IMG/VR virus record: IMGVR_UViG_3300047321_000238
Coordinates: 1 to 64,000 of that record
Direction: 5' to 3' (one strand)
Length of the DNA: 64,000 bases
Both the position numbers and the translations under genes were made by a program. The notes beneath the pieces were generated by a model, which saw only the letters and a list, made by a program, of their open reading frames with translations, had not been told where the DNA came from and ran no database searches. Of the stretch, positions 42,408 through 62,242 are shown piece by piece (positions within the stretch are counted from its first letter, which is position 1; each line of letters starts with the position of its first letter).

Positions 42408-44621
42408 TTACTTTGCTCCTTTCTTAAATGTGATTTTGCAACTACAAAAAGAATGGAATGGAGGAATCTCATCAACATTAATAGCTTTTAATTCAATCGT
42501 CTTATTATATTGTTTACTGTCTTCCGAATCACCAAAGTCTACATAAGCTTCTTGATATTTAAATGCTTCTCCTGTTTTTAAGTACGAGTACCAATATACT
42601 TTAGGTAGAATATATTCTAATAAGTATCTAACTCTATATTCCAGTACATCGAAAACATCATTAACATGATTTTCGCTAGTGTCATCCTTTATTCTCTTTT
42701 TAATGTCTTGCAATGTTTTTTGTAATGTGATTCTTGCTTCGTCTTCGAATTGCATTAAAGTAATTCTGACTGTAGGTAATATTAGCTTTTTATTCTGAAG
42801 CGTTTCTATATCATCAGTAGCTTTATTAATACCTTCTAAAGAATACAATTGCATATTTAATTTGACTTCTTCAATTAGATTTGTTAAAGCCAATGGGAAT
42901 ATTAAATCGATATCTTCTGGATTATCGATAATATCATTACGCAAGTTATTGTATTTTATATATACCGACTCAAAACTTTTTTTGTGTTTTGTCTTAGAAT
43001 TTTTTGCTTTCTCTTGCAAACTCAAACTTTCCTTAATCTTTACAGATGTTTTACCATGCTGATTTGAAGGAGTATTTGTATTACTTATTGACTTATTTGG
43101 TTTGCTACTTTTGCTTGTACCATTTCCTTTTGGATTAACTCCTTTAGAACCTGAACCTGTTACAGCTTTTGATTTAGCAGCAACTGCAGCTTGTTTAGCT
43201 TGAGCATCCGCGGTTATCTTAGCTGTCTTTAATGCTGTATCTGCATTAAACTTAGCTTGTTCCATTTGGATATCTCCTTGTTCTTGTGCAATCTCAACCG
43301 AAGCATCAGTTTGAACATTAATCATATCTTCTTGTGCTTTGCCTATAATCATGTTTTGATATAATCTTTCTTCATCAACAGTTTCCTTCTTACCGATTTC
43401 TCTTCTCATTTCTTCGAATGTAATCATGTTAGATTGGAACTTGTTCATTTCATGATTCTCTAACTTAATTCTTGTATCAATAGAGATTTCATTAAATACA
43501 AAACTTACTCTGTCATCTTCATTAGTAACTGGATTGAATCCACCTTCTAATAGTAATTCGTTGATGACAAAATTCTCTAGGAATATAGAGAATATCTTTT
43601 GAATGTATTTAACTGTATCATGAGCTTGTGATTCCATAGTGTCAGCATTACTTCCTGTAGCACCTCTACCCATTTGAGATTGAGATACTCCCAAAGCAGA
43701 GAATACCCTGTTTTCAAAGTATGTTAAATATGCAGATGCATTAAGAGCTGTTCCTTGTGCACCAATCGCTTTTATTTCTGTCTTTTCGTTTGTTACAACA
43801 GAACCATCAAGTGGCATACTTTCTATTTCACGTTTTGCTTCATCTATTTCTCTATCTGTAGCTTGGAATCCTGTTAGAGGTTTACCAATTATCCATTGAA
43901 ATAGAGGCATTGAAAATCTGTGAATTAAAGTCATTATATTTCCTTCAATTCTTCTAAGTATCTTTACATCTTCCATTGCTGCAAGCATTCTTGGTGTACC
44001 AAAAGCATTAGATGCTTCTTTATCAAGATAGAAATGTATTACTTCTGTAACATCGTATATCTTTTCTTTTCCATCTACTTGTTGAATGTATTTCTTAATC
44101 TCACCATTAATTCCTCTTTGTACAGAAACTGTAGCTGGATCAATCTTAAAATAACCGCCTATAGGGTTGTCCTTATAAAATCCTTTTGCTTGAACTCCAT
44201 CCATGATATTCTTAACTCTTGATTTAATAATAAAAGCATTTGAATATTTAATAAGATCATCGCCTATTTCCTGAAACAAAATGTCTACAGGTTTTCCAGT
44301 AGAAAAACTCATTATATAAAGTCTTGTCTTGATATAGTCTGTTGCCTTTTCATTTTCTGATTTGAGTAAGTACCCAGCTTTAAATAACATATAACTATAT
44401 TTCATTATTGACATTTTGATATAAGAGTCAGCTTCAGCAGCTTCTCTAATTTCTGCTAAGTCGTATTCAGGTGCAGATAGATTTTCTCTCGTATCTGCAT
44501 CCCCCTTAATAAGACTAATTGCTTTAACTAAATAATTCTTATAATTATTTTTATTTACATTTGAACTAGGTGACTCTGTGAAATTTCTATTGTTAGCTTT
44601 TGACTTAAAAAAGAAACCCAT
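42408..44621 (-). CDS. Portal protein with C-terminal MuF/gp7-like extension
   Basis: DLIKYSNAF, EVIHF..AFGTP and ALGVSQSQMG portal motifs; terminal IPPFHSFCSC. Confidence 0.8.
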   Translation of the reverse strand: MGFFFKSKANNRNFTESPSSNVNKNNYKNYLVKAISLIKGDADTRENLSAPEYDLAEIREAAEADSYIKMSIMKYSYMLFKAGYLLKSENEKATDYIKTRLYIMSFSTGKPVDILFQEIGDDLIKYSNAFIIKSRVKNIMDGVQAKGFYKDNPIGGYFKIDPATVSVQRGINGEIKKYIQQVDGKEKIYDVTEVIHFYLDKEASNAFGTPRMLAAMEDVKILRRIEGNIMTLIHRFSMPLFQWIIGKPLTGFQATDREIDEAKREIESMPLDGSVVTNEKTEIKAIGAQGTALNASAYLTYFENRVFSALGVSQSQMGRGATGSNADTMESQAHDTVKYIQKIFSIFLENFVINELLLEGGFNPVTNEDDRVSFVFNEISIDTRIKLENHEMNKFQSNMITFEEMRREIGKKETVDEERLYQNMIIGKAQEDMINVQTDASVEIAQEQGDIQMEQAKFNADTALKTAKITADAQAKQAAVAAKSKAVTGSGSKGVNPKGNGTSKSSKPNKSISNTNTPSNQHGKTSVKIKESLSLQEKAKNSKTKHKKSFESVYIKYNNLRNDIIDNPEDIDLIFPLALTNLIEEVKLNMQLYSLEGINKATDDIETLQNKKLILPTVRITLMQFEDEARITLQKTLQDIKKRIKDDTSENHVNDVFDVLEYRVRYLLEYILPKVYWYSYLKTGEAFKYQEAYVDFGDSEDSKQYNKTIELKAINVDEIPPFHSFCSCKITFKKGAK

Positions 44622-51743: not shown

Positions 51744-52445
51744 TTAATTTTGTTCTTTGACATCTACAAACTCTGCAGGAGCTTCATCGATTATGAATTC
51801 TGCATTACCTGACATAACTGTATTAATCATATCAGTTAACGAATCCTTATCACTAATCTCACCTTTCTTATTCTTTCTAGTAGCAAGCATTAAATCATAT
51901 ATCTCATTTCTTTTTCTTTCTGTTCTTTCTAATGCTTCCCAATGTTTTGATATCTCAGGTTTGAAATAAACCTCACCTTGTTCACTAACACCAGCAAATA
52001 CATCTTCTACTAGAACGCCTGCTTTATTAAGTAAGGCTTTGCATCTCTCAATCATAATGTCGTGATTAATTAATGATATAACTAAATTCTTATCAGTGAA
52101 ACTTGCATCTTCTAGATCAAAGTCATTTTCATATCCAGCATATCGTAACTCAATTTGGGCCGTCTCTACTGGACACGGTTCACCAAGTGGTGCCAAATTA
52201 TATGGAAGCAAACTACAAGTTTCTGCATACGGACATCCGTCAGCTTTACAACTAAGCGGTATTCTAGCATACATTCCCGTTTTTGTAGATAACATACTCA
52301 TAGCAGCTCTTTTAGCTTCAACTCCTACAGCAGAGTAACCCCACATATTTTCTAAGTTCTTTTCAAAGTTTTCTCTATTTATCATAGCCTCACACTGAGT
52401 ATCATCTACAGCTAAATCAGATTGTAATACTTCTTCTTCATCCAT
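51744..52445 (-). CDS. Cys-cluster protein, possible terminase small subunit
   Basis: CKADGCPYAETC..PCPVE, then helical segment ending LATRKNK; near the start of the late module; function inferred from position only. Confidence 0.35.
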   Translation of the reverse strand: MDEEEVLQSDLAVDDTQCEAMINRENFEKNLENMWGYSAVGVEAKRAAMSMLSTKTGMYARIPLSCKADGCPYAETCSLLPYNLAPLGEPCPVETAQIELRYAGYENDFDLEDASFTDKNLVISLINHDIMIERCKALLNKAGVLVEDVFAGVSEQGEVYFKPEISKHWEALERTERKRNEIYDLMLATRKNKKGEISDKDSLTDMINTVMSGNAEFIIDEAPAEFVDVKEQN

Positions 52446-52861
52446 TATTTATCACCACCAGTCTCTTCTTCTATTTCCTCTACCTTGACCATACCCTTAT
52501 ACTGTGGTCCGATATCTCCCATAATAGGATGTTCATCTTTATACATTTCATCTTCGATCATTTTCATCTCAGAAGGATATAGTATAAATTTAGCACCATC
52601 TTCTTCAATTCCTAAGATTTCTAATTTAGTACAAGTGAAATAATATCCTATATTATAATCATCACTTCCGAAACTTTCTTGATATACTTCTACTCCAGTC
52701 AATTTAAATCTCTTTGTTTGTATTGAAGTAATGTCATCAAAGTACAGATGTGTCAAAATAATACCTTGAATCTTAAATCCTGATCTATCCTCATTAGGTA
52801 CTCTATCAAATGTCACTTTTCCATTTACAGAAAGATCATTGTTTATTATTATGTTTGCCAT
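52445..52861 (-). CDS. Hypothetical protein, first gene of late module
   Basis: ORF with AAGGGGG RBS. Confidence 0.65.
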   Translation of the reverse strand: MANIIINNDLSVNGKVTFDRVPNEDRSGFKIQGIILTHLYFDDITSIQTKRFKLTGVEVYQESFGSDDYNIGYYFTCTKLEILGIEEDGAKFILYPSEMKMIEDEMYKDEHPIMGDIGPQYKGMVKVEEIEEETGGDK

Positions 52862-53140
52862 GTTAAATTCCCCCTTGTTCTTTTCTTTTCTCTATATATT
52901 ACTATCTATATCTCATATATTAATAACGTCTTGCCATATATTACTTATTCTAAATATTCTATTTAATTTCCAAATATTACCTTATATAGAGATGAAAAAT
53001 TTATAAAAAATAATTTTAAAAAATAGAAAAGTTGAACTTTTAAAAAAAGCCTATAGGGAAAAACGAAAAATATAAAAAATTTCTAGGGGAAGTAGGTATA
53101 TATATATATGTATATATGTTGAAAATGTAGCCCCATGGGT
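52862..53140. promoter_or_regulatory. Divergent late/early control region with three TATTAC(T/C) copies, A-tracts and a TA run
   Basis: Strand switch; TATTACT at 52897 and 52939, TATTACC at 52975; A5-A7 tracts 52995-53080; (TA)n 53097-53117. Confidence 0.5.
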
Positions 53141-53394
53141 ATCATTATCATTATCAAGTTGAACTGTTTCAGTAACCGAGTTGAATGGAATAACATGCAA
53201 CGTCATGCCACAACTCATGGAGGATCATGAAAAACTTATCTCTATCTGTCAAGATAACCTTAACTTTAAAAGACTTATTAATAACTAGTACAGTAAAGGC
53301 TTATATATGTGCATACATATATAGGTCTTATAGTGTACTAGATACACAAGCAATAGACTACATATAGTAGGTGAGCATAAGGAGGACAACTAGT

Positions 53395-53850
53395 ATGACA
53401 ACTTTATCAATGGAGGCTTTAATGAGCTTAAGCAAAGAAGAATTAGCAAGAATGGTTATGGACTTACACAAAGACACATTAACAGGATGTTATAAAAGAG
53501 AAGTATTAGATACAGTGAAACAAGACTTATACACTGTAGCGTTTGTTGATGTTAATGGATTAAAGGCTATTAATGATACACAAGGTCATGAGTATGGAGA
53601 TAAGCACATACTAAGTGTAGTAGATAGTATCAATGCTAATGTAAGGAAACAAGATACTGTAGTTAGGTATGGTGGAGATGAATTCATAATCATATTCAAT
53701 GACTGTAGTATAGACAATGCTAAAGGTGCTATATCTAGGATAACATCTGCATCAGTGGGTATAGCACAACATACAGACTTAGATATGGCAATTAAACTAG
53801 CTGATATGGACATGTATAAGAACAAAAGAAACTACTATGATGTAGTATAG
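53395..53850 (+). CDS. Minimal GGDEF diguanylate cyclase
   Basis: DTLTG, FVDVNGLKAINDTQGHEYGD, RKQD I-site, RYGGDEF, SVGIA and ADMDMYKNK; ATG 53395 behind AAGGAGG. Confidence 0.9.
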   Translation: MTTLSMEALMSLSKEELARMVMDLHKDTLTGCYKREVLDTVKQDLYTVAFVDVNGLKAINDTQGHEYGDKHILSVVDSINANVRKQDTVVRYGGDEFIIIFNDCSIDNAKGAISRITSASVGIAQHTDLDMAIKLADMDMYKNKRNYYDVV

Positions 53851-53878
53851 ATACTCATATACGAAAGGATGAATAAAC

Positions 53879-54136
53879 ATGAAAACAACAAAGAATGAAG
53901 CATTACTTATACTAGCACAAAGGATAATGGATCAACGTATTAAGCCTATGATAGATAAGGCTATTAGTATGGACCATGATAGTAAGCCTATAGCATATAG
54001 ACCTGAATTAGACAATAACGATTATGCTGAATACATAGCATCTAAGGACAAGACATTAGTACACATAAATAAACACACACGAAAGGATGATGAAACATGC
54101 ATTACTACGAATACAACGATACAGAGGACAAGATAA
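53879..54136 (+). CDS. Hypothetical early protein
   Basis: GAAAGGA RBS plus ATG. Confidence 0.6.
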   Translation: MKTTKNEALLILAQRIMDQRIKPMIDKAISMDHDSKPIAYRPELDNNDYAEYIASKDKTLVHINKHTRKDDETCITTNTTIQRTR

Positions 54137-57156: not shown

Positions 57157-57298
57157 TAAATCTAAGACTAATAAGACTACTGAAGGATTGTTCGTAATCT
57201 TTCAATGCATGGGCCTATAGTATTTGAACTTAGGCACTATGAGTGACAGGGATAATGGGGTACAAATAAAAATATATGATGAAAAGGATGGATACAAA

Positions 57299-60200
57299 AT
57301 GATAAACACAAACACATTAACTAATGGAACTACTACAACAAACACAAATGAAGGGATGGATGTACAAATGGTAAATATCAATGTAACAAACGTAGCTAAA
57401 ATAGTAGGGGTATCAAATGAAGAAGTTGTAGCATTAGCTATAAGATTAGGTTTAGAAGTTTCAACATCAGGTAAGAAAATAAACAATGTTATTTCTACTG
57501 CAATTGTAGTTGAAGCTGTTAATGATTTAATAGCTAAAGATGAAGTTGCAGTTACAAATATAGTAAACAATAATGAAGGGATGGATGTAAAAATGGTTAA
57601 CAAGATTAAAGAGGAAATAATGGAAATGGTTTATTCTGAAATGAACAAGGAAATAGCTAAACAAGAAATTAGAGACGAATACTTAAACAGAGTTGCAACT
57701 GTTGCAGCTATAGTTGATGAATCTAATAAAAAGTACAAAAGAAATACTTTAAGCAAAGTAGAATTAGTTGATTATGTAGTAGCTAACAATATCGAAGTTA
57801 ATGACAAAGAATTAAGAGCACTATATTCTCAATTAAATGCTGCAAGAGATAAAGAAGCTAAATCAGAATTAGTTCACAAGATCATAGATCAAATGAATGA
57901 AGGTAAATTCACTTATAAAATGTATGCAACTGCTAATAAGTACAAGCACCTTTTATCTGAAGATGATACAATTACTTTTGAATTAGCATTAGATGTAGCT
58001 CTTAATAAGGCTTCTATGAAGAACTACAAGAACCTATTAGCTGTTAAAAGATGGACTAAAGATATCACTGTTGCATTATTAAGAAGAGTTGTTTGCTATA
58101 CTGGTAATCAATATGAAACAGAAGTAGCTCCTCAAATGTTCAGTTCTCTAATCAGAGCTTGTGATGTTACAGTTAAAGATGTTGCAGATTCTAAGATGAC
58201 TTTAAATGGATACACTACTGATGAGTTACTATTATTCTCATTCGATAAAGATGTATTAAAATTAACTGGAAATAATGACAGAGAAGTATTAGCTAAAAAA
58301 GATTACCTAGCTAAAGTATTCTATATCATTGCTGGATTATCTGAACAAAAGGTTTATATAGTTGAAAGAAAATCAGGTATTGCAGATGTTTATACTAATA
58401 TCAACAAGATCAAATTAAATGAAGGTGAAGTTATAAAACAATATGAATTCTTAGGAATAACTCCATCTGGTTTAAGATCTGGAACTATGACATTAGCTAT
58501 CACTAAAGAAATTCACGCTGATGGAACTGTTGTTGAAAGAGATAGAAGAGTTGAAATCATGGACAAAGCTTCTGATAATTCATTCAGCATTAACTTTATC
58601 GTAGGTGCGAATGAAAATGGACAAGCTATATTCAAAGATTGCGAATCAGTACTTGATGCATTTAAAGAAATGTCTAGAATGATGTTATGTGCTACATCTT
58701 CAAAAGTGCTTGGTAAATTAGACTCTTATGTTGTATTAGATAATTTATCTTTTGGTGCAGGATATAATGCTAAAGATACTAACTCTCCTGCTAAAATGGG
58801 TGAAGAAAATTTCGTAGATTGTCAAGATACTACTGATGGTTTAGGATTAATATCTAATGATATGTTAAAAGAAAATCTTCAAGCTATGAACATTCCATGC
58901 TCAATTAAAGACTTATTAGGAATGACATTCCAAGCTAGAGGTGGCGGATTAAAGATTGCTGCAATGTCAAGATCTAAAGAAGCTATTAGACTAGAAGCAA
59001 AAGCATCATTAAGCAGAGGAGCATCTGTATTAAGAGCTGTATTCAAAGGACAAGAAGTTAAAGCTAAAGATCTAACTGATGAAATGTTAGATAACATGCA
59101 AGGATTGTTTGATGGTAATGGTATGAAGTTAATCGATCACAATGCTGAAATCGAATTAGTAATGCTTAAGAAAGCTTATTCATCTGACTCTAAATTATCT
59201 GATGTTGTTAATATTATAATGATGGTTAATGATGAACAAGCTACTACAGCATTATTATCTTCTAAAATAAAAAGTCAAATCTTAGACAAATTAAAAGACA
59301 TTGGTATAAACGTAGATTACAATGCAGAAACTGATGAAGTTATCAGCGTAAAATGTGATCTTAAGAACTTAAAAAGAATCAACAATGACAGTCAAACAGT
59401 TGAATGGATGTTTAGATCTCTTCCTGAAACTATGATTGCATTAGCTCCTGGTGTTCAAAAGACAAACTTTAATAGCTTATTGAAAGGTTTAGCTAACCTA
59501 ATCAACGAGCTTAATGTTGAAGTTAATTGTGAATATACTGTTGTTCAATCAGATCCAGCAGTTAGATTTGGTGTAAGAATAATAAAAGAAGATGAAGTAT
59601 TCTGCCCAAGCTTAATAGAAGTAAATAAAGTATCAGGTGTTAGACATCCAGTATCAAACTTATTTGCTGTTTCTACATTCAAGACACTTACTCTAAAAAC
59701 TATCTTAAAGAGAATTGATAAATTGAATGTATCTCTTGAAGTTAAAAACATGTTATTTGAATTCTACAAAGGAGTAGAAGGTTATGCTATAATACCAGCA
59801 TCTCACTACTACATGGAAAAACATGATGGAATGGATTTCGATATCGATGCTATGCAATTTTTCTTAGATCAAGAAGTAGTAGCAATACTTGAAAAGACTT
59901 CTGATATAGGAACAATAATTGATAGATCTATTGATGAAGAAATGGATTGTTCTATTAAGGAATCTAATGATGACCATGCTATCAAAGCTTTCTACAAAGA
60001 TATTAACAAGAAAGATTTCCACCCTATAGCTTATGATGTAAAAGTATCTGAAGAAAAGATAGCACCAGTTAAAGCATTAAAAGGAATGGTTATGCCTAAG
60101 AAGATTAATGTTGCTTCTACTGAAGATAATCATTACAAGAAAAATGCAAATGGAAGATACTCATTAGACTTCTCTTCAGTTGCTATGATGGTATTAGATT

Positions 60201-62242
60201 ATTTCTTAAACCCAATAGATTCAGTTGGTATCATGGCAACAAACTTCTATAATAATGCTAAAATACTTATGGCATTAAAATCAATTAACACTGAAATCAC
60301 TAAAGAAATGAAACAATTCATAGTTCAAGGAATGAGAACAATGTTTTCTTGTAGTGGTTTAAAGAAGTATTCTTCTCCAATCAGAAAGAACAATGACGGA
60401 ACAAAATTTAACTACAACGATAGAAATAAAGTTGTTCTATGCAAAGATGTTTGTCACAAAATAATCAAAACATTTATCAACTCTAAAGGAGATTTTGCAG
60501 ATTGTATTCAATTCTTAATTGATGTATGTATTTGTAGTAGATATCCAGCTGAAACTTCTATTGATAGTGCTAAGAAAATGTATAAAGTTATAAACATGTT
60601 TGCATTATCTGGTTGTATTAAAGCTATGGGTTGTAAAAATGCTGTTAAATTCTTAAACTTTGATCCATATATGTTAGATGACCAAGGTAACTCTATTGAA
60701 GAAGTAGAAACTACAAAAGCATTCACTAACATTATTGACATCTTTAATGCAGCTCAACCAAAAAATGCTCTACAATATTCAACAAACAATTTCTTTGGAT
60801 TAAAATTAATAAAAGAAGAAATGTCATGTGTTGGTTGGGAAGATGCTGATAAGGCTATGTTAGCTTTCAATACAGAGAAAAAAGTAGCAGGTATTAAAGA
60901 TCCTACTTATCTATTAAAAGAAAGACTAATGAACTTTGCTAATTCAGTTATAGTATTTGCAGCTAAAGAATTAGAAGCATTTGTTAAATCAGATGAAGCT
61001 AATGCTATCAGAAAAGAATTCAAAGGTTTCTACAATTCAGAAGATAATTATTTCAGAGTTGATAAAGTAGTATCTAACATCGTTGGTACTTATATCACAT
61101 TAACTGAATCAATCAAAGCTTCAGAAAATGATGAAATAGATGATATAACTGCAAAGAAATATCTTAAGACAAATGCATTACAAGCTCTAATGAACACAGC
61201 TAAACTTTCATTTAAAACAGCTAGAAAACCAGTATCTGATGAAGAAATTGGAGCAGGTGTGTTCTATTATATGATTACTTCTTTTGAAAAAGAAAAAGAC
61301 AATGTATGTACTTCAGTTAACTCTAAGATTCTTGATATCTTCCAAAAAGAGATATTAGCATTCTTAAAATCTAAAGGATATGATATGCTTGCTGCTGAAG
61401 AAATATTATATGCTGTTAATCCTGTAACTAACAGACAAGTTAAATTAAATACAACAGAAGGATTAACATGTTCTGCATATAATGGTCATGGTACAATTGA
61501 ATTAGAAGATGGTTCAATCTATTTATTAACTCTAAAGAATAAGAAAGCATCTTTTGATAATGGTACTATTTCTATAGTAGATGATAAGTATGTTGTTGTT
61601 CAACAAAGAAAAACTTTAGAAGAAAATATACAATCAGGATTCTACTTTGGTGCTAAAATGGAAAAAGGAATATTCAACAAAGCTAATCTTCTAATGCAAG
61701 ATATTAAAAAGACTACTGGTGATTACAATGAATACAAAGCAGCATTAGCAGAAATAAATCCTAATAACATTTTAGCTGAGACACAATATGATGAAATTCT
61801 TTTCAGAACAAGAAGAGAAATGGACGAAAGAGGAAAATCATATACAGCTAATCTTTTAATTGGTATGAAAGATGATCAAGAATGTTTAATAGCTGAGTTA
61901 TACCTTAATACAATCGTTGCTCAATTATTACAAACTGCTGAGTTATCTGAAAGCAATGTAAGATTATTCATGACTGAAAATAGTTGTACTGTTAACATTA
62001 TTGAAGACTCTCTATTAGCTGAAGTTGAATCAGTTAGCACTCCTGACACTATAAGTGATTCATTTGGATTAGATGACTTAGAAGGATTCAGTAACTCAAT
62101 AATAGATTATTCTTGTTATGATGTTACTCCAGTTCAAGAAAACTATGATGAAAAACAATTCGTTGCAATTACAACAAACTACGATATTCCTCAAGTTGAC
62201 ATGTGCAATGACGAAAACTATTTAAATGGTTTAACTCAATAA
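57299..62242 (+). CDS. YonO/cRdRP-like single-subunit DNA-dependent RNA polymerase (about 1647 aa)
   Basis: TDGLGLIS, FQARGGGLK, VRHP and DGMDFDID in the order found in the cRdRP/YonO family; likely ATG 57299 behind GAAAAGGA (ORF track starts 57224). Confidence 0.8.
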   Translation: MINTNTLTNGTTTTNTNEGMDVQMVNINVTNVAKIVGVSNEEVVALAIRLGLEVSTSGKKINNVISTAIVVEAVNDLIAKDEVAVTNIVNNNEGMDVKMVNKIKEEIMEMVYSEMNKEIAKQEIRDEYLNRVATVAAIVDESNKKYKRNTLSKVELVDYVVANNIEVNDKELRALYSQLNAARDKEAKSELVHKIIDQMNEGKFTYKMYATANKYKHLLSEDDTITFELALDVALNKASMKNYKNLLAVKRWTKDITVALLRRVVCYTGNQYETEVAPQMFSSLIRACDVTVKDVADSKMTLNGYTTDELLLFSFDKDVLKLTGNNDREVLAKKDYLAKVFYIIAGLSEQKVYIVERKSGIADVYTNINKIKLNEGEVIKQYEFLGITPSGLRSGTMTLAITKEIHADGTVVERDRRVEIMDKASDNSFSINFIVGANENGQAIFKDCESVLDAFKEMSRMMLCATSSKVLGKLDSYVVLDNLSFGAGYNAKDTNSPAKMGEENFVDCQDTTDGLGLISNDMLKENLQAMNIPCSIKDLLGMTFQARGGGLKIAAMSRSKEAIRLEAKASLSRGASVLRAVFKGQEVKAKDLTDEMLDNMQGLFDGNGMKLIDHNAEIELVMLKKAYSSDSKLSDVVNIIMMVNDEQATTALLSSKIKSQILDKLKDIGINVDYNAETDEVISVKCDLKNLKRINNDSQTVEWMFRSLPETMIALAPGVQKTNFNSLLKGLANLINELNVEVNCEYTVVQSDPAVRFGVRIIKEDEVFCPSLIEVNKVSGVRHPVSNLFAVSTFKTLTLKTILKRIDKLNVSLEVKNMLFEFYKGVEGYAIIPASHYYMEKHDGMDFDIDAMQFFLDQEVVAILEKTSDIGTIIDRSIDEEMDCSIKESNDDHAIKAFYKDINKKDFHPIAYDVKVSEEKIAPVKALKGMVMPKKINVASTEDNHYKKNANGRYSLDFSSVAMMVLDYFLNPIDSVGIMATNFYNNAKILMALKSINTEITKEMKQFIVQGMRTMFSCSGLKKYSSPIRKNNDGTKFNYNDRNKVVLCKDVCHKIIKTFINSKGDFADCIQFLIDVCICSRYPAETSIDSAKKMYKVINMFALSGCIKAMGCKNAVKFLNFDPYMLDDQGNSIEEVETTKAFTNIIDIFNAAQPKNALQYSTNNFFGLKLIKEEMSCVGWEDADKAMLAFNTEKKVAGIKDPTYLLKERLMNFANSVIVFAAKELEAFVKSDEANAIRKEFKGFYNSEDNYFRVDKVVSNIVGTYITLTESIKASENDEIDDITAKKYLKTNALQALMNTAKLSFKTARKPVSDEEIGAGVFYYMITSFEKEKDNVCTSVNSKILDIFQKEILAFLKSKGYDMLAAEEILYAVNPVTNRQVKLNTTEGLTCSAYNGHGTIELEDGSIYLLTLKNKKASFDNGTISIVDDKYVVVQQRKTLEENIQSGFYFGAKMEKGIFNKANLLMQDIKKTTGDYNEYKAALAEINPNNILAETQYDEILFRTRREMDERGKSYTANLLIGMKDDQECLIAELYLNTIVAQLLQTAELSESNVRLFMTENSCTVNIIEDSLLAEVESVSTPDTISDSFGLDDLEGFSNSIIDYSCYDVTPVQENYDEKQFVAITTNYDIPQVDMCNDENYLNGLTQ

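What the first reader, a model, noticed from the sequence alone, without database searches (positions are those of the whole stretch)
53395..53850. Phage-encoded minimal diguanylate cyclase as the first clear early gene
Seen: a 151-aa stand-alone GGDEF domain with intact active site, an RxxD inhibitory site (RKQD, five residues before GGDEF) and only a short amphipathic helix (LSKEELARMVMDL) before DTLTG; no sensor domain. Established: DGCs need dimerisation, and in clostridia c-di-GMP acts through riboswitches on flagella, pili and adhesion. Inference: a constitutive, feedback-capped cyclase that reprograms the host right after infection, affecting receptor display, biofilm, sporulation or nucleotide-signal immunity.
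Basis: partly seen in the sequence, partly recalled or inferred. Interest (0 to 1): 0.72.

Follow-up and report, generated by a model that had tools for sequence, protein, structure and literature searches.

The report
Minimal diguanylate cyclase in jumbo phage
A 248-kb uncultured phage that probably infects soil Clostridium carries a stripped-down but apparently intact enzyme for making the bacterial signal c-di-GMP. It is a new example of a little-studied class of short phage cyclases, not a new kind of system.

Summary
Window 53395-53850 (+) encodes a 151-aa stand-alone GGDEF protein. It has an intact GGDEF motif, the metal- and guanine-binding residues of PleD, a complete RxxD I-site with its partner arginine, and only a short N-terminal helix. 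The fold is a confident GGDEF palm (pLDDT 96) that lacks the peripheral hairpin and the last strand. A homodimer through the N-terminal helix is predicted (ipSAE 0.50; best control 0.01).

The genome is a complete 247.9-kb jumbo myovirus from a rhizosphere metagenome. A Clostridium host is supported: NrdD is 65-67% identical to Clostridium sensu stricto, Shine-Dalgarno use is strong, and the phage has a SigF/G-like sigma factor.

The gene is a single-gene cassette of about 0.7 kb. It sits between a conserved divergent regulatory region and the first conserved plus-strand gene, and it is absent from close relatives. It lies in a variable block of small genes upstream of a phage RNA polymerase gene of the QDE-1/crAss-gp66 fold.

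Short GGDEF-only phage proteins are already known but uncharacterised (YuA gp44, C. perfringens phages, Bacillus phages G and SP-15). This is a new member of a known kind. Enzyme activity, timing of expression and effect on the host remain inferred.

The parts
53395..53850 (+). CDS of the 151-aa stand-alone minimal GGDEF protein
   Evidence: ORF and sequence. Pfam PF00990 74.5 bits. TIGR00254 71.7 bits. AF2 pLDDT 96.1. The Foldseek top 50 matches are all diguanylate cyclases.
53380..53385 (+). Shine-Dalgarno AGGAGG, 9 nt before the ATG
   Evidence: Sequence. SD-like motifs precede 60% of the naively called ORFs against 8% of random positions.
53428..53466 (+). N-terminal amphipathic helix (residues 12-24, LSKEELARMVMDL), the predicted dimer interface
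   Evidence: Helix 14-24 in the model. The interface residues of the predicted homodimer fall here. L9, K14, L17 and V21 are invariant in the family.
53473..53487 (+). DTLTG entry motif of the GGDEF domain (residues 27-31)
   Evidence: D27, L29, T30 and G31 are invariant in the close family.
53548..53601 (+). DVNGLKAINDTQGHEYGD block: D52 (metal), K57, N60 and D69 (guanine recognition)
   Evidence: Ungapped alignment to PleD 2wb4 315-391. These residues are invariant across 44 sequences.
53644..53655 (+). RKQD, the RxxD primary inhibitory (I) site
   Evidence: Sequence. Corresponds to PleD R359-D362. D87 is invariant; R84 is kept in 9 of 12 family members.
53671..53685 (+). GGDEF active-site motif (residues 93-97)
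   Evidence: Sequence. Invariant in the close family.
53737..53739 (+). R115, equivalent of PleD R390 (third residue of the primary I-site)
   Evidence: Last residue but one of the ungapped stretch aligned to PleD. Arginine in most family members.
53800..53826 (+). ADMDMYKNK: C-terminal helix motif with K144 (phosphate-binding lysine of AD..Y..K)
   Evidence: A136, D137, Y141 and K144 are invariant in the family. Aligned to TM1788 132-150.
53170..53878 (+). About 0.7-kb cassette (leader with hairpin, SD, GGDEF gene) that is absent from the syntenic junction of a 258.8-kb relative
   Evidence: DNA alignment with L209. Synteny of the flanking genes.
52862..53169 (.). Divergent intergenic region conserved with the relative. 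It holds unique G/C-rich blocks at 53050, 53081 and 53127 and is the likely regulatory region for both gene blocks.
   Evidence: alignment. (the blocks are unique in the genome and keep the same order and spacing in L209).
53285..53341 (+). 57-nt near-perfect hairpin in the leader, 54 nt before the ATG
   Evidence: the repeat finder I5/I9. RNA fold -34.2 kcal/mol for 53270-53400, z = -4.0.
53879..54136 (+). First conserved gene of the plus block (85 aa, no family). In relative L209 its homologue is the first plus-strand gene.
   Evidence: tblastn. No Pfam or PADLOC hit.
57239..62242 (+). Context: 1,667-aa single-subunit two-barrel RNA polymerase (QDE-1 / crAss gp66 / YonO class) with an invariant HDGMDFDIDA motif, 3.4 kb downstream
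   Evidence: No Pfam or PHROG hit. 48 homologues all keep the motif. AF2 pLDDT 83. Foldseek matches QDE-1 at E 2.7e-8 and phi14:2 gp66 at E 3e-5.

Best explanation
The gene encodes an active, sensor-less diguanylate cyclase.

Proposed mechanism:
- Two copies are held together by the short N-terminal helix.
- Each GGDEF half-site binds one GTP, through D52 and E96 (metal), N60 and D69 (guanine), and K144 (phosphates).
- The dimer condenses the two GTP molecules to c-di-GMP.
- Product binding at R84/D87/R115 caps the output.

The gene is a single-gene accessory cassette. It sits directly behind the conserved divergent control region, at the head of the non-structural block of a jumbo Clostridium myovirus. 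It is therefore probably transcribed with the first wave of genes.

The c-di-GMP made would act on the host's own receptors, because the phage carries none. In clostridia these are largely riboswitches and lead to motility and chemotaxis off, adhesion and pili on, and sporulation delayed. That would hold the infected cell in a sessile, non-sporulating state that suits phage production.

Shown: the gene, its residues, fold, rarity, cassette nature and position.
Predicted: the dimer.
Inferred: catalysis, timing of expression, host and physiological effect.
For: Domain and residues:
- The GGDEF family scores are well over their cut-offs.
- Every catalytic and I-site residue of PleD is matched one-to-one in an ungapped alignment.
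- The same residues are invariant across the roughly 150-aa family despite 43-54% overall identity, which points to selection for catalysis.
- Asp, not Ser, sits at the guanine-specificity position (D69).

Fold and dimer:
- The GGDEF fold is confident and all top PDB matches are true cyclases, including coiled-coil-tethered ones (3i5c, 6ttr).
- The predicted homodimer forms through residues 1-25. Score 0.50, best of 3 controls 0.01. That mark was reached by 20 of 30 proteins solved as pairs and 1 of 23 solved as single chains.
- A natural tandem fusion of two minimal domains exists (P0045).

Gene and position:
- Intact ORF with a strong SD.
- It is the first gene after a conserved regulatory region, as a cassette.

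Host:
- NrdD is 65-67% identical to Clostridium sensu stricto.
- SD usage is strong.
- The phage has a SigF/G-like sigma factor.
- C. oryzae has c-di-GMP-I riboswitches before cheB/cheX and cheY/cheA operons.
- c-di-GMP inhibits early sporulation in C. difficile (PMC8653836, PMC13724677) and regulates flagella, pili and adhesins through riboswitches (PMC6200980).
- Lysogens of a Bordetella phage that encodes a similar short GGDEF protein over-produce biofilm (PMC8471281; correlative only).
Against: - No enzyme of this truncated form has been assayed. The domain lacks the beta-hairpin of about 20 residues between alpha3 and the SxGxA strand, and it lacks the C-terminal strand.
- The second phosphate-binding arginine of the AD..Y.AK..GRN motif is not in register: position 148 is Tyr, and R145 lies three residues earlier.
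- The stalk helix is only about three turns.
- The dimer is a prediction, made with my own alignment.
- R84 of the I-site is missing in 3 of 12 family members.
- Timing of expression is unknown. No promoter motif was found and no RNA run was listed.
- Complete relatives do without the gene, so it is not essential.
- The host is inferred, not shown. The riboswitch and sporulation data come from other species (C. oryzae, C. difficile).
Confidence: 0.6

Rival explanations
1. The gene is a lysogenic-conversion-type or carrier-state 'moron'. The cyclase is real, but it serves a persistent association (pseudolysogeny, or a biofilm or sessile carrier state). It is not an immediate-early takeover step of lytic infection.
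For: - It is a single-gene cassette with its own leader, present or absent among close relatives.
- The same junction in relatives and in L082/L204 carries antirepressor (pRha/ANT) and HicAB genes.
- The YuA annotation reads 'putative role in host cell conversion'.
- Lysogens of the Bordetella phage show hyper-biofilm (PMC8471281).
Against: - I saw no integrase or repressor gene, but I did not search the whole genome for them.
- The gene lies in the orientation and position of the first transcription unit of the non-structural block.
Confidence: 0.15
2. The protein acts as a c-di-GMP binder (a sponge or receptor through the I-site), or is otherwise catalytically dead. It would lower or read host c-di-GMP rather than make it.
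For: - The primary I-site is complete (R84, D87, R115).
- The fold is truncated and the second phosphate-binding arginine is out of register.
- Phages are known to use nucleotide sponges (PMC12657218).
Against: - All A-site residues (D52, K57, N60, D69, GGDEF, K144) are invariant in the family, while the I-site arginine is the less conserved feature.
- To my knowledge, receptor-type GGDEF domains have degenerate active sites.
Confidence: 0.1
3. The enzyme makes a different nucleotide (cGAMP or c-di-AMP as in Hypr GGDEF, or mCpol-like decoy nucleotides). It would serve counter-defence against cyclic-nucleotide immunity.
For: - Its minimal palm size resembles mCpol/OptS (PMC12657218).
- Some short homologues carry weak Cas10 palm hits (P0006, P0024; Atlas row 59).
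Against: - Asn60 and Asp69, the guanine-reading residues, are invariant. According to PMC12657218, Ser versus Asn decides A versus G recognition.
- The best sequence and structure matches are all c-di-GMP cyclases.
- There are no PADLOC hits and no effector-like neighbour.
Confidence: 0.08
4. The cyclase is functionally coupled to the neighbouring phage RNA polymerase. For example, it could supply pppGpG or c-di-GMP as a primer or a cofactor.
For: In 5 of 6 contexts with enough flanking DNA, the mini-GGDEF lies 0.06-3.4 kb from a large DxDxD two-barrel RNAP gene. The gene order varies, and in one context the RNAP is of a different lineage.
Against: - Relatives keep the RNAP and the surrounding genes without any GGDEF. 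The linkage is therefore explained by a variable early-gene region that happens to lie next to the RNAP gene.
- L204 has no such gene within 8 kb downstream.
- YuA and the C. perfringens phages show no annotated RNAP beside their GGDEF gene.
Confidence: 0.04

Closest known systems
Pseudomonas phage YuA gp44 and the Yuavirus / Bordetella Vojvodinavirus homologues
   Same: A short GGDEF-only phage protein of about 150 aa, with a short N-terminal helix and the same deleted hairpin. Foldseek matches Bordetella phage CN1. Already cited as the example of a phage c-di-GMP element (PMC10333796) and annotated 'putative role in host cell conversion'.
   Different: About 30-33% identical. YuA has SGDEF instead of GGDEF and no RxxD. 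It is a 58-62-kb siphovirus of Gram-negative hosts. Its gene lies inside a middle-region operon, not at a divergent junction.
Clostridium perfringens phage proteins (Clo-PEP-1 gp61, CP3, CPD4, P21, A2-H1)
   Same: A 146-aa stand-alone GGDEF in phages of a Clostridium, with the same truncations. It is sister to the window's family in the tree, with moderate support of 82/84.
   Different: About 35% identical. The motif is RWGGDEF with no arginine in the RxxD position. These are 50-kb phages, and the gene lies among replication genes.
Canonical GGDEF diguanylate cyclases (PleD, WspR, TM1788, DosC, SiaD)
   Same: Same family by Pfam and TIGRFAM. Identical catalytic and I-site residues. TM-score 0.66-0.79.
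   Different: No sensor or receiver domain. The beta3'/beta3'' hairpin and the terminal strand are missing. The second phosphate-binding arginine is out of register. It is encoded by a virus.
Small GGDEF proteins of jumbo Bacillus phages (SP-15 'diguanylate cyclase', 183 aa; phage G gp350, 254 aa)
   Same: Jumbo phages of spore-forming Bacillota that carry a small GGDEF protein. Foldseek E 5e-11 and 7e-11.
   Different: 28-29% identical and longer. I did not inspect their context.
mCpol / OptS of the Panoptes defence system
   Same: A minimal stand-alone palm-domain nucleotide cyclase that works as an oligomer (PMC12657218).
   Different: mCpol nearly lacks the GGDEF motif, makes 2',3'-c-di-AMP or cGAMP, is bacterial and is paired with a membrane effector. 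Here the motif and guanine-reading residues are canonical, there is no effector neighbour and no PADLOC hit.

Membership tests
GGDEF diguanylate cyclase (PF00990 / TIGR00254) | Profile score above the curated cut-off | tested here: met
   PF00990 74.5 vs 23.8 bits. TIGR00254 71.7 vs 37.4 bits. Only profile positions 29-104 of 161 align strongly.
GGDEF diguanylate cyclase (PF00990 / TIGR00254) | GG[D/E]EF active-site motif and metal-binding Asp (PleD D327) | tested here: met
   G93-F97 and D52. Ungapped alignment to PleD. Invariant in the family.
GGDEF diguanylate cyclase (PF00990 / TIGR00254) | Guanine-specific Asn and Asp (PleD N335, D344) | tested here: met
   N60 and D69. Invariant in 44 sequences.
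GGDEF diguanylate cyclase (PF00990 / TIGR00254) | Phosphate-binding Lys and Arg of the C-terminal helix (PleD K442, R446) | tested here: inconclusive
   K144 is in register and invariant. The Arg position is Y148, and R145 lies one turn earlier. This region is outside the confident alignment to PleD.
GGDEF diguanylate cyclase (PF00990 / TIGR00254) | Complete GGDEF fold (five-stranded sheet with beta3'/beta3'' hairpin and terminal strand) | tested here: not met
   About 20 residues are missing between residues 118 and 127 relative to TM1788. The model ends in a helix at 129-150 and has four main strands. The core palm is retained (TMq up to 0.79).
GGDEF diguanylate cyclase (PF00990 / TIGR00254) | Dimerisation that brings two half-sites together | tested here: inconclusive
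   Predicted homodimer through the N-terminal helix. Score 0.50, best of 3 controls 0.01. The mark was reached by 20 of 30 pair-solved and 1 of 23 single-chain proteins. This is a prediction only.
GGDEF diguanylate cyclase (PF00990 / TIGR00254) | Conversion of 2 GTP to c-di-GMP | not testable with these tools
   Needs an enzyme assay.
Product-inhibited DGC (I-site) | RxxD five residues before GGDEF, plus the partner Arg (PleD R359, D362, R390) | tested here: met
   R84, D87 and R115 are in exact register. RxxD is kept in 9 of 12 family members.
Hypr GGDEF (cGAMP-producing) | Ser in place of the guanine-specific Asp (PleD D344 position) | tested here: not met
   D69 is invariant in the family. 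The criterion itself is from my own knowledge of Hypr GGDEF enzymes.
mCpol / Panoptes OptS | Palm domain nearly lacking the GGDEF motif, adjacent 2TM effector gene, defence-island context | tested here: not met
   The motif is canonical. The neighbours are small soluble ORFans. There are no PADLOC hits. The top structural matches are GGDEF cyclases.
Short GGDEF-only phage proteins (YuA gp44 type) | Phage-encoded, about 130-190 aa, GGDEF domain only, hairpin-less C-terminal half | tested here: met
   Alignment with YuA gp44 and Clo-PEP-1 gp61. They fall on the same side of a weakly supported split (63/77) in the tree. The nearest Atlas clusters are viral proteins of 154-166 aa. Nine of 43 complete IMG/VR ORFs have the short tail.

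The most novel reading that the evidence does not exclude
The hairpin-less mini-GGDEF proteins may form a phage-restricted lineage of constitutive cyclases shared by phages of Gram-positive and Gram-negative hosts. In jumbo Clostridium phages they would be swapped in as cargo at the head of the early block next to a QDE-1/gp66-like phage RNA polymerase. Their role there would be to stop the host from sporulating or swimming during infection. More speculatively, they could feed a G-dinucleotide to that polymerase.
Probability: 0.15. Interest if true: 0.7.

Novelty: new member of a known kind. Interest (0 to 1): 0.4.

Why it matters
Why phages carry c-di-GMP cyclases is an open question that has hardly been tested. 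The known examples are annotations only.

This protein is small (151 aa) and has no sensor domain. All catalytic and feedback residues are in place, and it occurs as a clean presence/absence cassette. That makes it a convenient test case for two things: the minimal requirements of a GGDEF cyclase, and what a burst of c-di-GMP does to a spore-forming anaerobe during infection.

If it does block sporulation or motility, it would join phage sigma factors as a second way in which phages steer dormancy in Bacillota.

Tried and rejected
- c-di-GMP riboswitches or other Rfam families in the phage: none. Only the tRNA cluster was found, at gathering thresholds over the whole genome and at E<=1 around the gene.
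- EAL, PilZ and HD-GYP in the phage: none.
- Sigma-70-like promoters and terminators: not above shuffled expectation.
- Enriched upstream k-mers: only the SD.
- TATATTAC as a phage promoter motif: no consistent strand or position, although one copy lies in a block conserved with L209.
- Megablast of 44-64 kb against GenBank phages: no match.
- Closest cellular GGDEF proteins: at most about 41% identity and from many phyla, so uninformative for the host.
- RNA runs: none was listed.
Coverage at the junction was therefore not checked.
- Genus-level search around C. oryzae did not expand beyond that genome.
- PADLOC on the gene and seven neighbours: nothing.
- Pfam on ten neighbours: nothing.
- Profile of the large neighbour against PDB sequences: nothing. 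Against the L201 RdRP-family protein: only E 0.064. The fold comparison settled that question.
It was removed.

Full report
**1. The observation**

Window 53395-53850 (+) is an intact ORF of 151 codons plus a stop. AGGAGG lies nine bases before the ATG. The product scores 74.5 bits against Pfam GGDEF (cut-off 23.8) and 71.7 bits against TIGR00254 (cut-off 37.4).

- LSKEELARMVMDL at residues 12-24.
- DTLTG at 27-31.
- RKQD at 84-87, then five residues, then GGDEF at 93-97.

HMMER aligns residues 40-116 without a gap to PleD chain positions 315-391 (2wb4). This gives:
- D52 = D327 and K57 = K332.
- N60 = N335 and D69 = D344.
- R84/D87 = R359/D362.
- G93-F97 = 368-372.
- R115 = R390.

So the metal site, the guanine-reading pair, the signature motif and the complete primary I-site are all in register. 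The roles of these PleD residues are established knowledge (Chan et al. 2004, cited in PMC12657218). No other domain is present.

**2. What 'minimal' means here**

Pfam aligns only profile positions 29-104 of 161. Against the T. maritima GGDEF domain, query 118-127 spans target 103-132. About 20 residues, the peripheral hairpin after helix alpha3, are therefore missing. The helix after DxLTG is also shorter by about 8 residues.

AlphaFold2 with a 44-row alignment gives pLDDT 96.1. The model has a short stalk helix (14-24) and strands at 46-53, 88-91, 96-101 and 119-126. A long terminal helix (129-150) ends the protein, so the usual last strand is absent.

The top 50 Foldseek matches in the PDB are all bona fide diguanylate cyclases, with TMq 0.62-0.79. 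They include coiled-coil-tethered constructs.

One caveat remains. In the C-terminal AD..Y..K motif, K144 is in register, but the arginine four residues later is Tyr. R145 may or may not substitute for it.

**3. Dimer**

A two-copy prediction gave ipSAE 0.50 (runs 0.46, 0.50, 0.50), against 0.01 for the best of three controls. That mark was reached by 20 of 30 proteins solved as pairs and by 1 of 23 solved as single chains. These counts hold only roughly, because my own alignment was used.

The confident interface is residues 1-25 plus 28, 33, 36-37 and 40-42, which is the N-terminal helix region. L9, K14, L17 and V21 are invariant in the six closest homologues. One relative, P0045 (325 aa), is a tandem of two such minimal domains in a single chain. 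Both observations fit a two-domain working unit. All of this is prediction or inference, not measurement.

**4. The family**

A profile search of 1.84 billion representatives found about eight clusters of this roughly 150-aa form, 42-54% identical to the query. After these, ordinary multidomain GGDEF proteins take over the ranking.

All members keep D52, K57, N60, D61, G64, H65, G68, D69, D87, R91, Y92, GGDEF, G122, A136, D137, Y141 and K144. RxxD is kept in 9 of 12.

Short viral GGDEF proteins are much more widespread than this family:
- 127 GenBank phage records match. They include C. perfringens phages at about 35% identity and Pseudomonas Yuavirus and Bordetella Vojvodinavirus at about 33%.
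- 203 IMG/VR contigs encode relatives.
- BFVD holds Bacillus phages SP-15 and G and Bordetella CN1.
- The nearest ESM Atlas clusters are viral GGDEF-only proteins of 154-166 aa with 61-89 members.

YuA gp44 and Clo-PEP-1 gp61 share the same truncations, but they lack RxxD, and YuA has SGDEF.

In a 58-sequence tree the short viral forms fall on one side of a weakly supported split (63/77). Clo-PEP-1 gp61 is sister to the window's family (82/84). This hints at a common origin. Shared deletions and my selection of cellular sequences could also produce that result.

[quoted passage not shown] I found no biochemical study.

**5. The genome and the host**

The record is a complete 247,883-bp IMG/VR virus with a 127-bp terminal repeat. 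It was found in a rhizosphere metagenome.

Terminase, portal, major head and tail sheath genes lie on the minus strand of the window. The plus block encodes GyrA/B, a UvrD-type helicase, an SNF2-type helicase, NrdD, LigA, Pol III alpha and NAPRTase, and it holds a tRNA cluster.

Host evidence:
- NrdD is 70-87% identical to proteins on other contigs, some of about 245-370 kb.
- Among named cellular proteins, NrdD is 65-67% identical, almost all of them from Clostridium sensu stricto species.
- SD-like motifs precede 60% of ORFs, against 8% of random positions.
- G+C is about 31%.
- The phage encodes a SigB/F/G-like sigma factor.

Together these support an anaerobic, spore-forming Clostridium host. 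This is an inference, not proof.

**6. Position and cassette nature**

The gene is the first of the plus-strand block, after a 533-bp divergent gap.

In a 258.8-kb relative (L209) the flanking genes are collinear:
- Homologues of window 51744-52445 (83%) and 52445-52861 (71%) lie on the minus strand.
- After a 275-bp gap comes the homologue of window 53879-54136 as the first plus-strand gene.

The DNA alignment shows that the intergenic region from 52840 to about 53165 is conserved. Window positions from about 53170 to 53878 (a leader with a 57-nt hairpin, the SD and the GGDEF gene) have no counterpart in L209. The conserved part holds three G/C-rich blocks. Two occur only here in the genome and the third (CCTATAGGG) has one other copy at 44158. 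All three recur in the same order and near-identical spacing in L209.

Two complete relatives identified by terminase similarity (241 and 233 kb) lack any GGDEF. A third (238 kb) has one at 45% identity, but inside a block rather than at its head. Three relatives with the same architecture have no GGDEF within 10 kb.

The gene is thus accessory cargo, inserted directly behind a conserved control region. 'Early' is a reasonable positional inference, but nothing here tests it. Promoter scans were at background level, and no RNA run was listed.

**7. The neighbouring polymerase**

The 1,667-aa ORF at 57239-62242 has no Pfam or PHROG match. It has 48 homologues of 1,377-1,756 aa that all keep EKHDGMD[FW]DIDA.

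A model of residues 410-1030 (pLDDT 83) matches QDE-1 and RDR2 (E 2.7e-8, probability 1.00) and the virion RNA polymerase gp66 of crAss-like phage phi14:2 (E 3e-5). It is therefore a single-subunit two-barrel RNA polymerase.

In five of six contexts with enough flanking DNA, the mini-GGDEF lies within 3.4 kb of such a gene. The contexts are the window, L082, L200, L002 and L201, and L201's polymerase is a Pfam RdRP-family member. Relatives keep the polymerase and the neighbouring small genes without the cyclase. The simplest reading is that a variable region of small genes lies between the control region and the polymerase gene, and that the cyclase is one of its interchangeable occupants. A functional coupling is not excluded but is unlikely.

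**8. Mechanism and rivals**

The best-supported reading is an active, sensor-less, helix-tethered dimeric cyclase that makes c-di-GMP and is capped by its I-site. It would act through host receptors, because the phage has no EAL, HD-GYP, PilZ or c-di-GMP riboswitch of its own.

What the signal would do in a Clostridium is inferred from three sources:
- C. oryzae has two c-di-GMP-I riboswitches in front of cheB-cheX and cheY-cheA operons.
- In C. difficile, c-di-GMP controls flagella, pili and adhesins through riboswitches (PMC6200980).
- In C. difficile, c-di-GMP also inhibits early sporulation (PMC8653836, PMC13724677).

Delaying sporulation and stopping motility would both plausibly favour phage production. 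The phage's own SigF/G-like sigma factor shows that it already touches the sporulation circuitry.

The rivals are given with their probabilities in the Rival explanations section:
- A carrier-state conversion gene.
- A c-di-GMP binder.
- A different nucleotide product used for counter-defence. Invariant N60 and D69 and the absence of any defence-type neighbour argue against this.
- Coupling to the RNA polymerase.

**9. Verdict**

Short GGDEF-only phage proteins are on record, so this is a new member of a known kind.

Four points go beyond the record:
- The defined truncation of the fold.
- The retained I-site.
- The predicted stalk dimer.
- The clean cassette polymorphism in a jumbo Clostridium phage.

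Interest is moderate.

Noticed in passing
window 57239-62242 (+); the database gene call starts at 57299: A 1,667-aa protein with no Pfam or PHROG family is a single-subunit two-barrel RNA polymerase. It has an invariant HDGMDFDIDA motif in 48 homologues of 1,377-1,756 aa. The model matches QDE-1/RDR2 (E 2.7e-8) and crAss-like phi14:2 gp66 (E 3e-5). Many homologues carry a Rho_N domain. It may be an undescribed branch of YonO/gp66-like phage polymerases in roughly 250-kb Clostridium-type phages.
   Followed up: yes
window 53285-53341 (+): A 57-nt near-perfect hairpin lies in the leader, 54 nt before the GGDEF start. No T-run follows it. It belongs to the cassette that relative L209 lacks, and nothing similar was apparent by eye upstream of the homologue in L082. 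Its function is unknown; it could be an operator, a processing site or a recombination scar.
   Followed up: partly
window 52862-53169: The divergent intergenic region is conserved with a 258.8-kb relative at a level close to that of the coding flanks. Its G/C-rich blocks (CCTATAGGG at 53050, TTCTAGGGG at 53081, GTAGCCCCATGGG at 53127) are rare or unique in the genome (CCTATAGGG recurs once, at 44158) and keep their spacing in the relative. The cumulative GC skew also turns here (about 53 kb). The region could hold promoters or operators, or a replication origin.
   Followed up: partly
genome G000 132444-133655 (+), outside the window (L197 1345-2553): A 403-aa sigma factor whose best NCBIfam matches are SigB/SigF/SigG (E 2.5e-29, below the equivalog cut-offs). 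This fits a spore-forming host and phage interference with sporulation.
   Followed up: partly
genome G000 159445-161664 (+), outside the window (L089 16445-18661): An anaerobic ribonucleotide reductase NrdD, 65-67% identical to Clostridium sensu stricto enzymes and 70-87% identical to those of other contigs, some of about 245-370 kb. It points to a sizeable uncultured group of jumbo phages of anaerobes.
   Followed up: partly
window 38-25050 (-): Three giant ORFs of 3,081, 2,867 and 2,066 aa lie downstream of the tail genes. The only Pfam hit is DUF6046 in the first. They are presumably virion or tail-fibre proteins.
   Followed up: partly
protein P0045 (locus L207 1314-2291): A 325-aa protein made of two tandem minimal GGDEF domains (RFGGDEF and RLGGDEF, both without RxxD). 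It is a natural covalent 'dimer' of the mini-domain.
   Followed up: partly
genome G000 about 115,000-120,000, outside the window (L087): A cluster of 16-19 tRNA genes, two with odd anticodon loops according to ARAGORN.
   Followed up: no
genome G000 88656-90224 (+), outside the window (L086 5056-6621): A 522-aa protein that combines an NMT1/THI5-like solute-binding domain with a C-terminal OmpA-family peptidoglycan-binding domain. This is unusual cargo for a phage.
   Followed up: no
loci L082 2230-2988, L208 428-1243, L210 4132-5010, L204 3440-4207 and 5666-6168: The same junction or early region in relatives carries pRha/ANT antirepressor-like genes. In L204 it also carries a HicA/HicB pair. 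This suggests a hot spot for accessory genes, and possibly a temperate or carrier lifestyle in part of the group.
   Followed up: no
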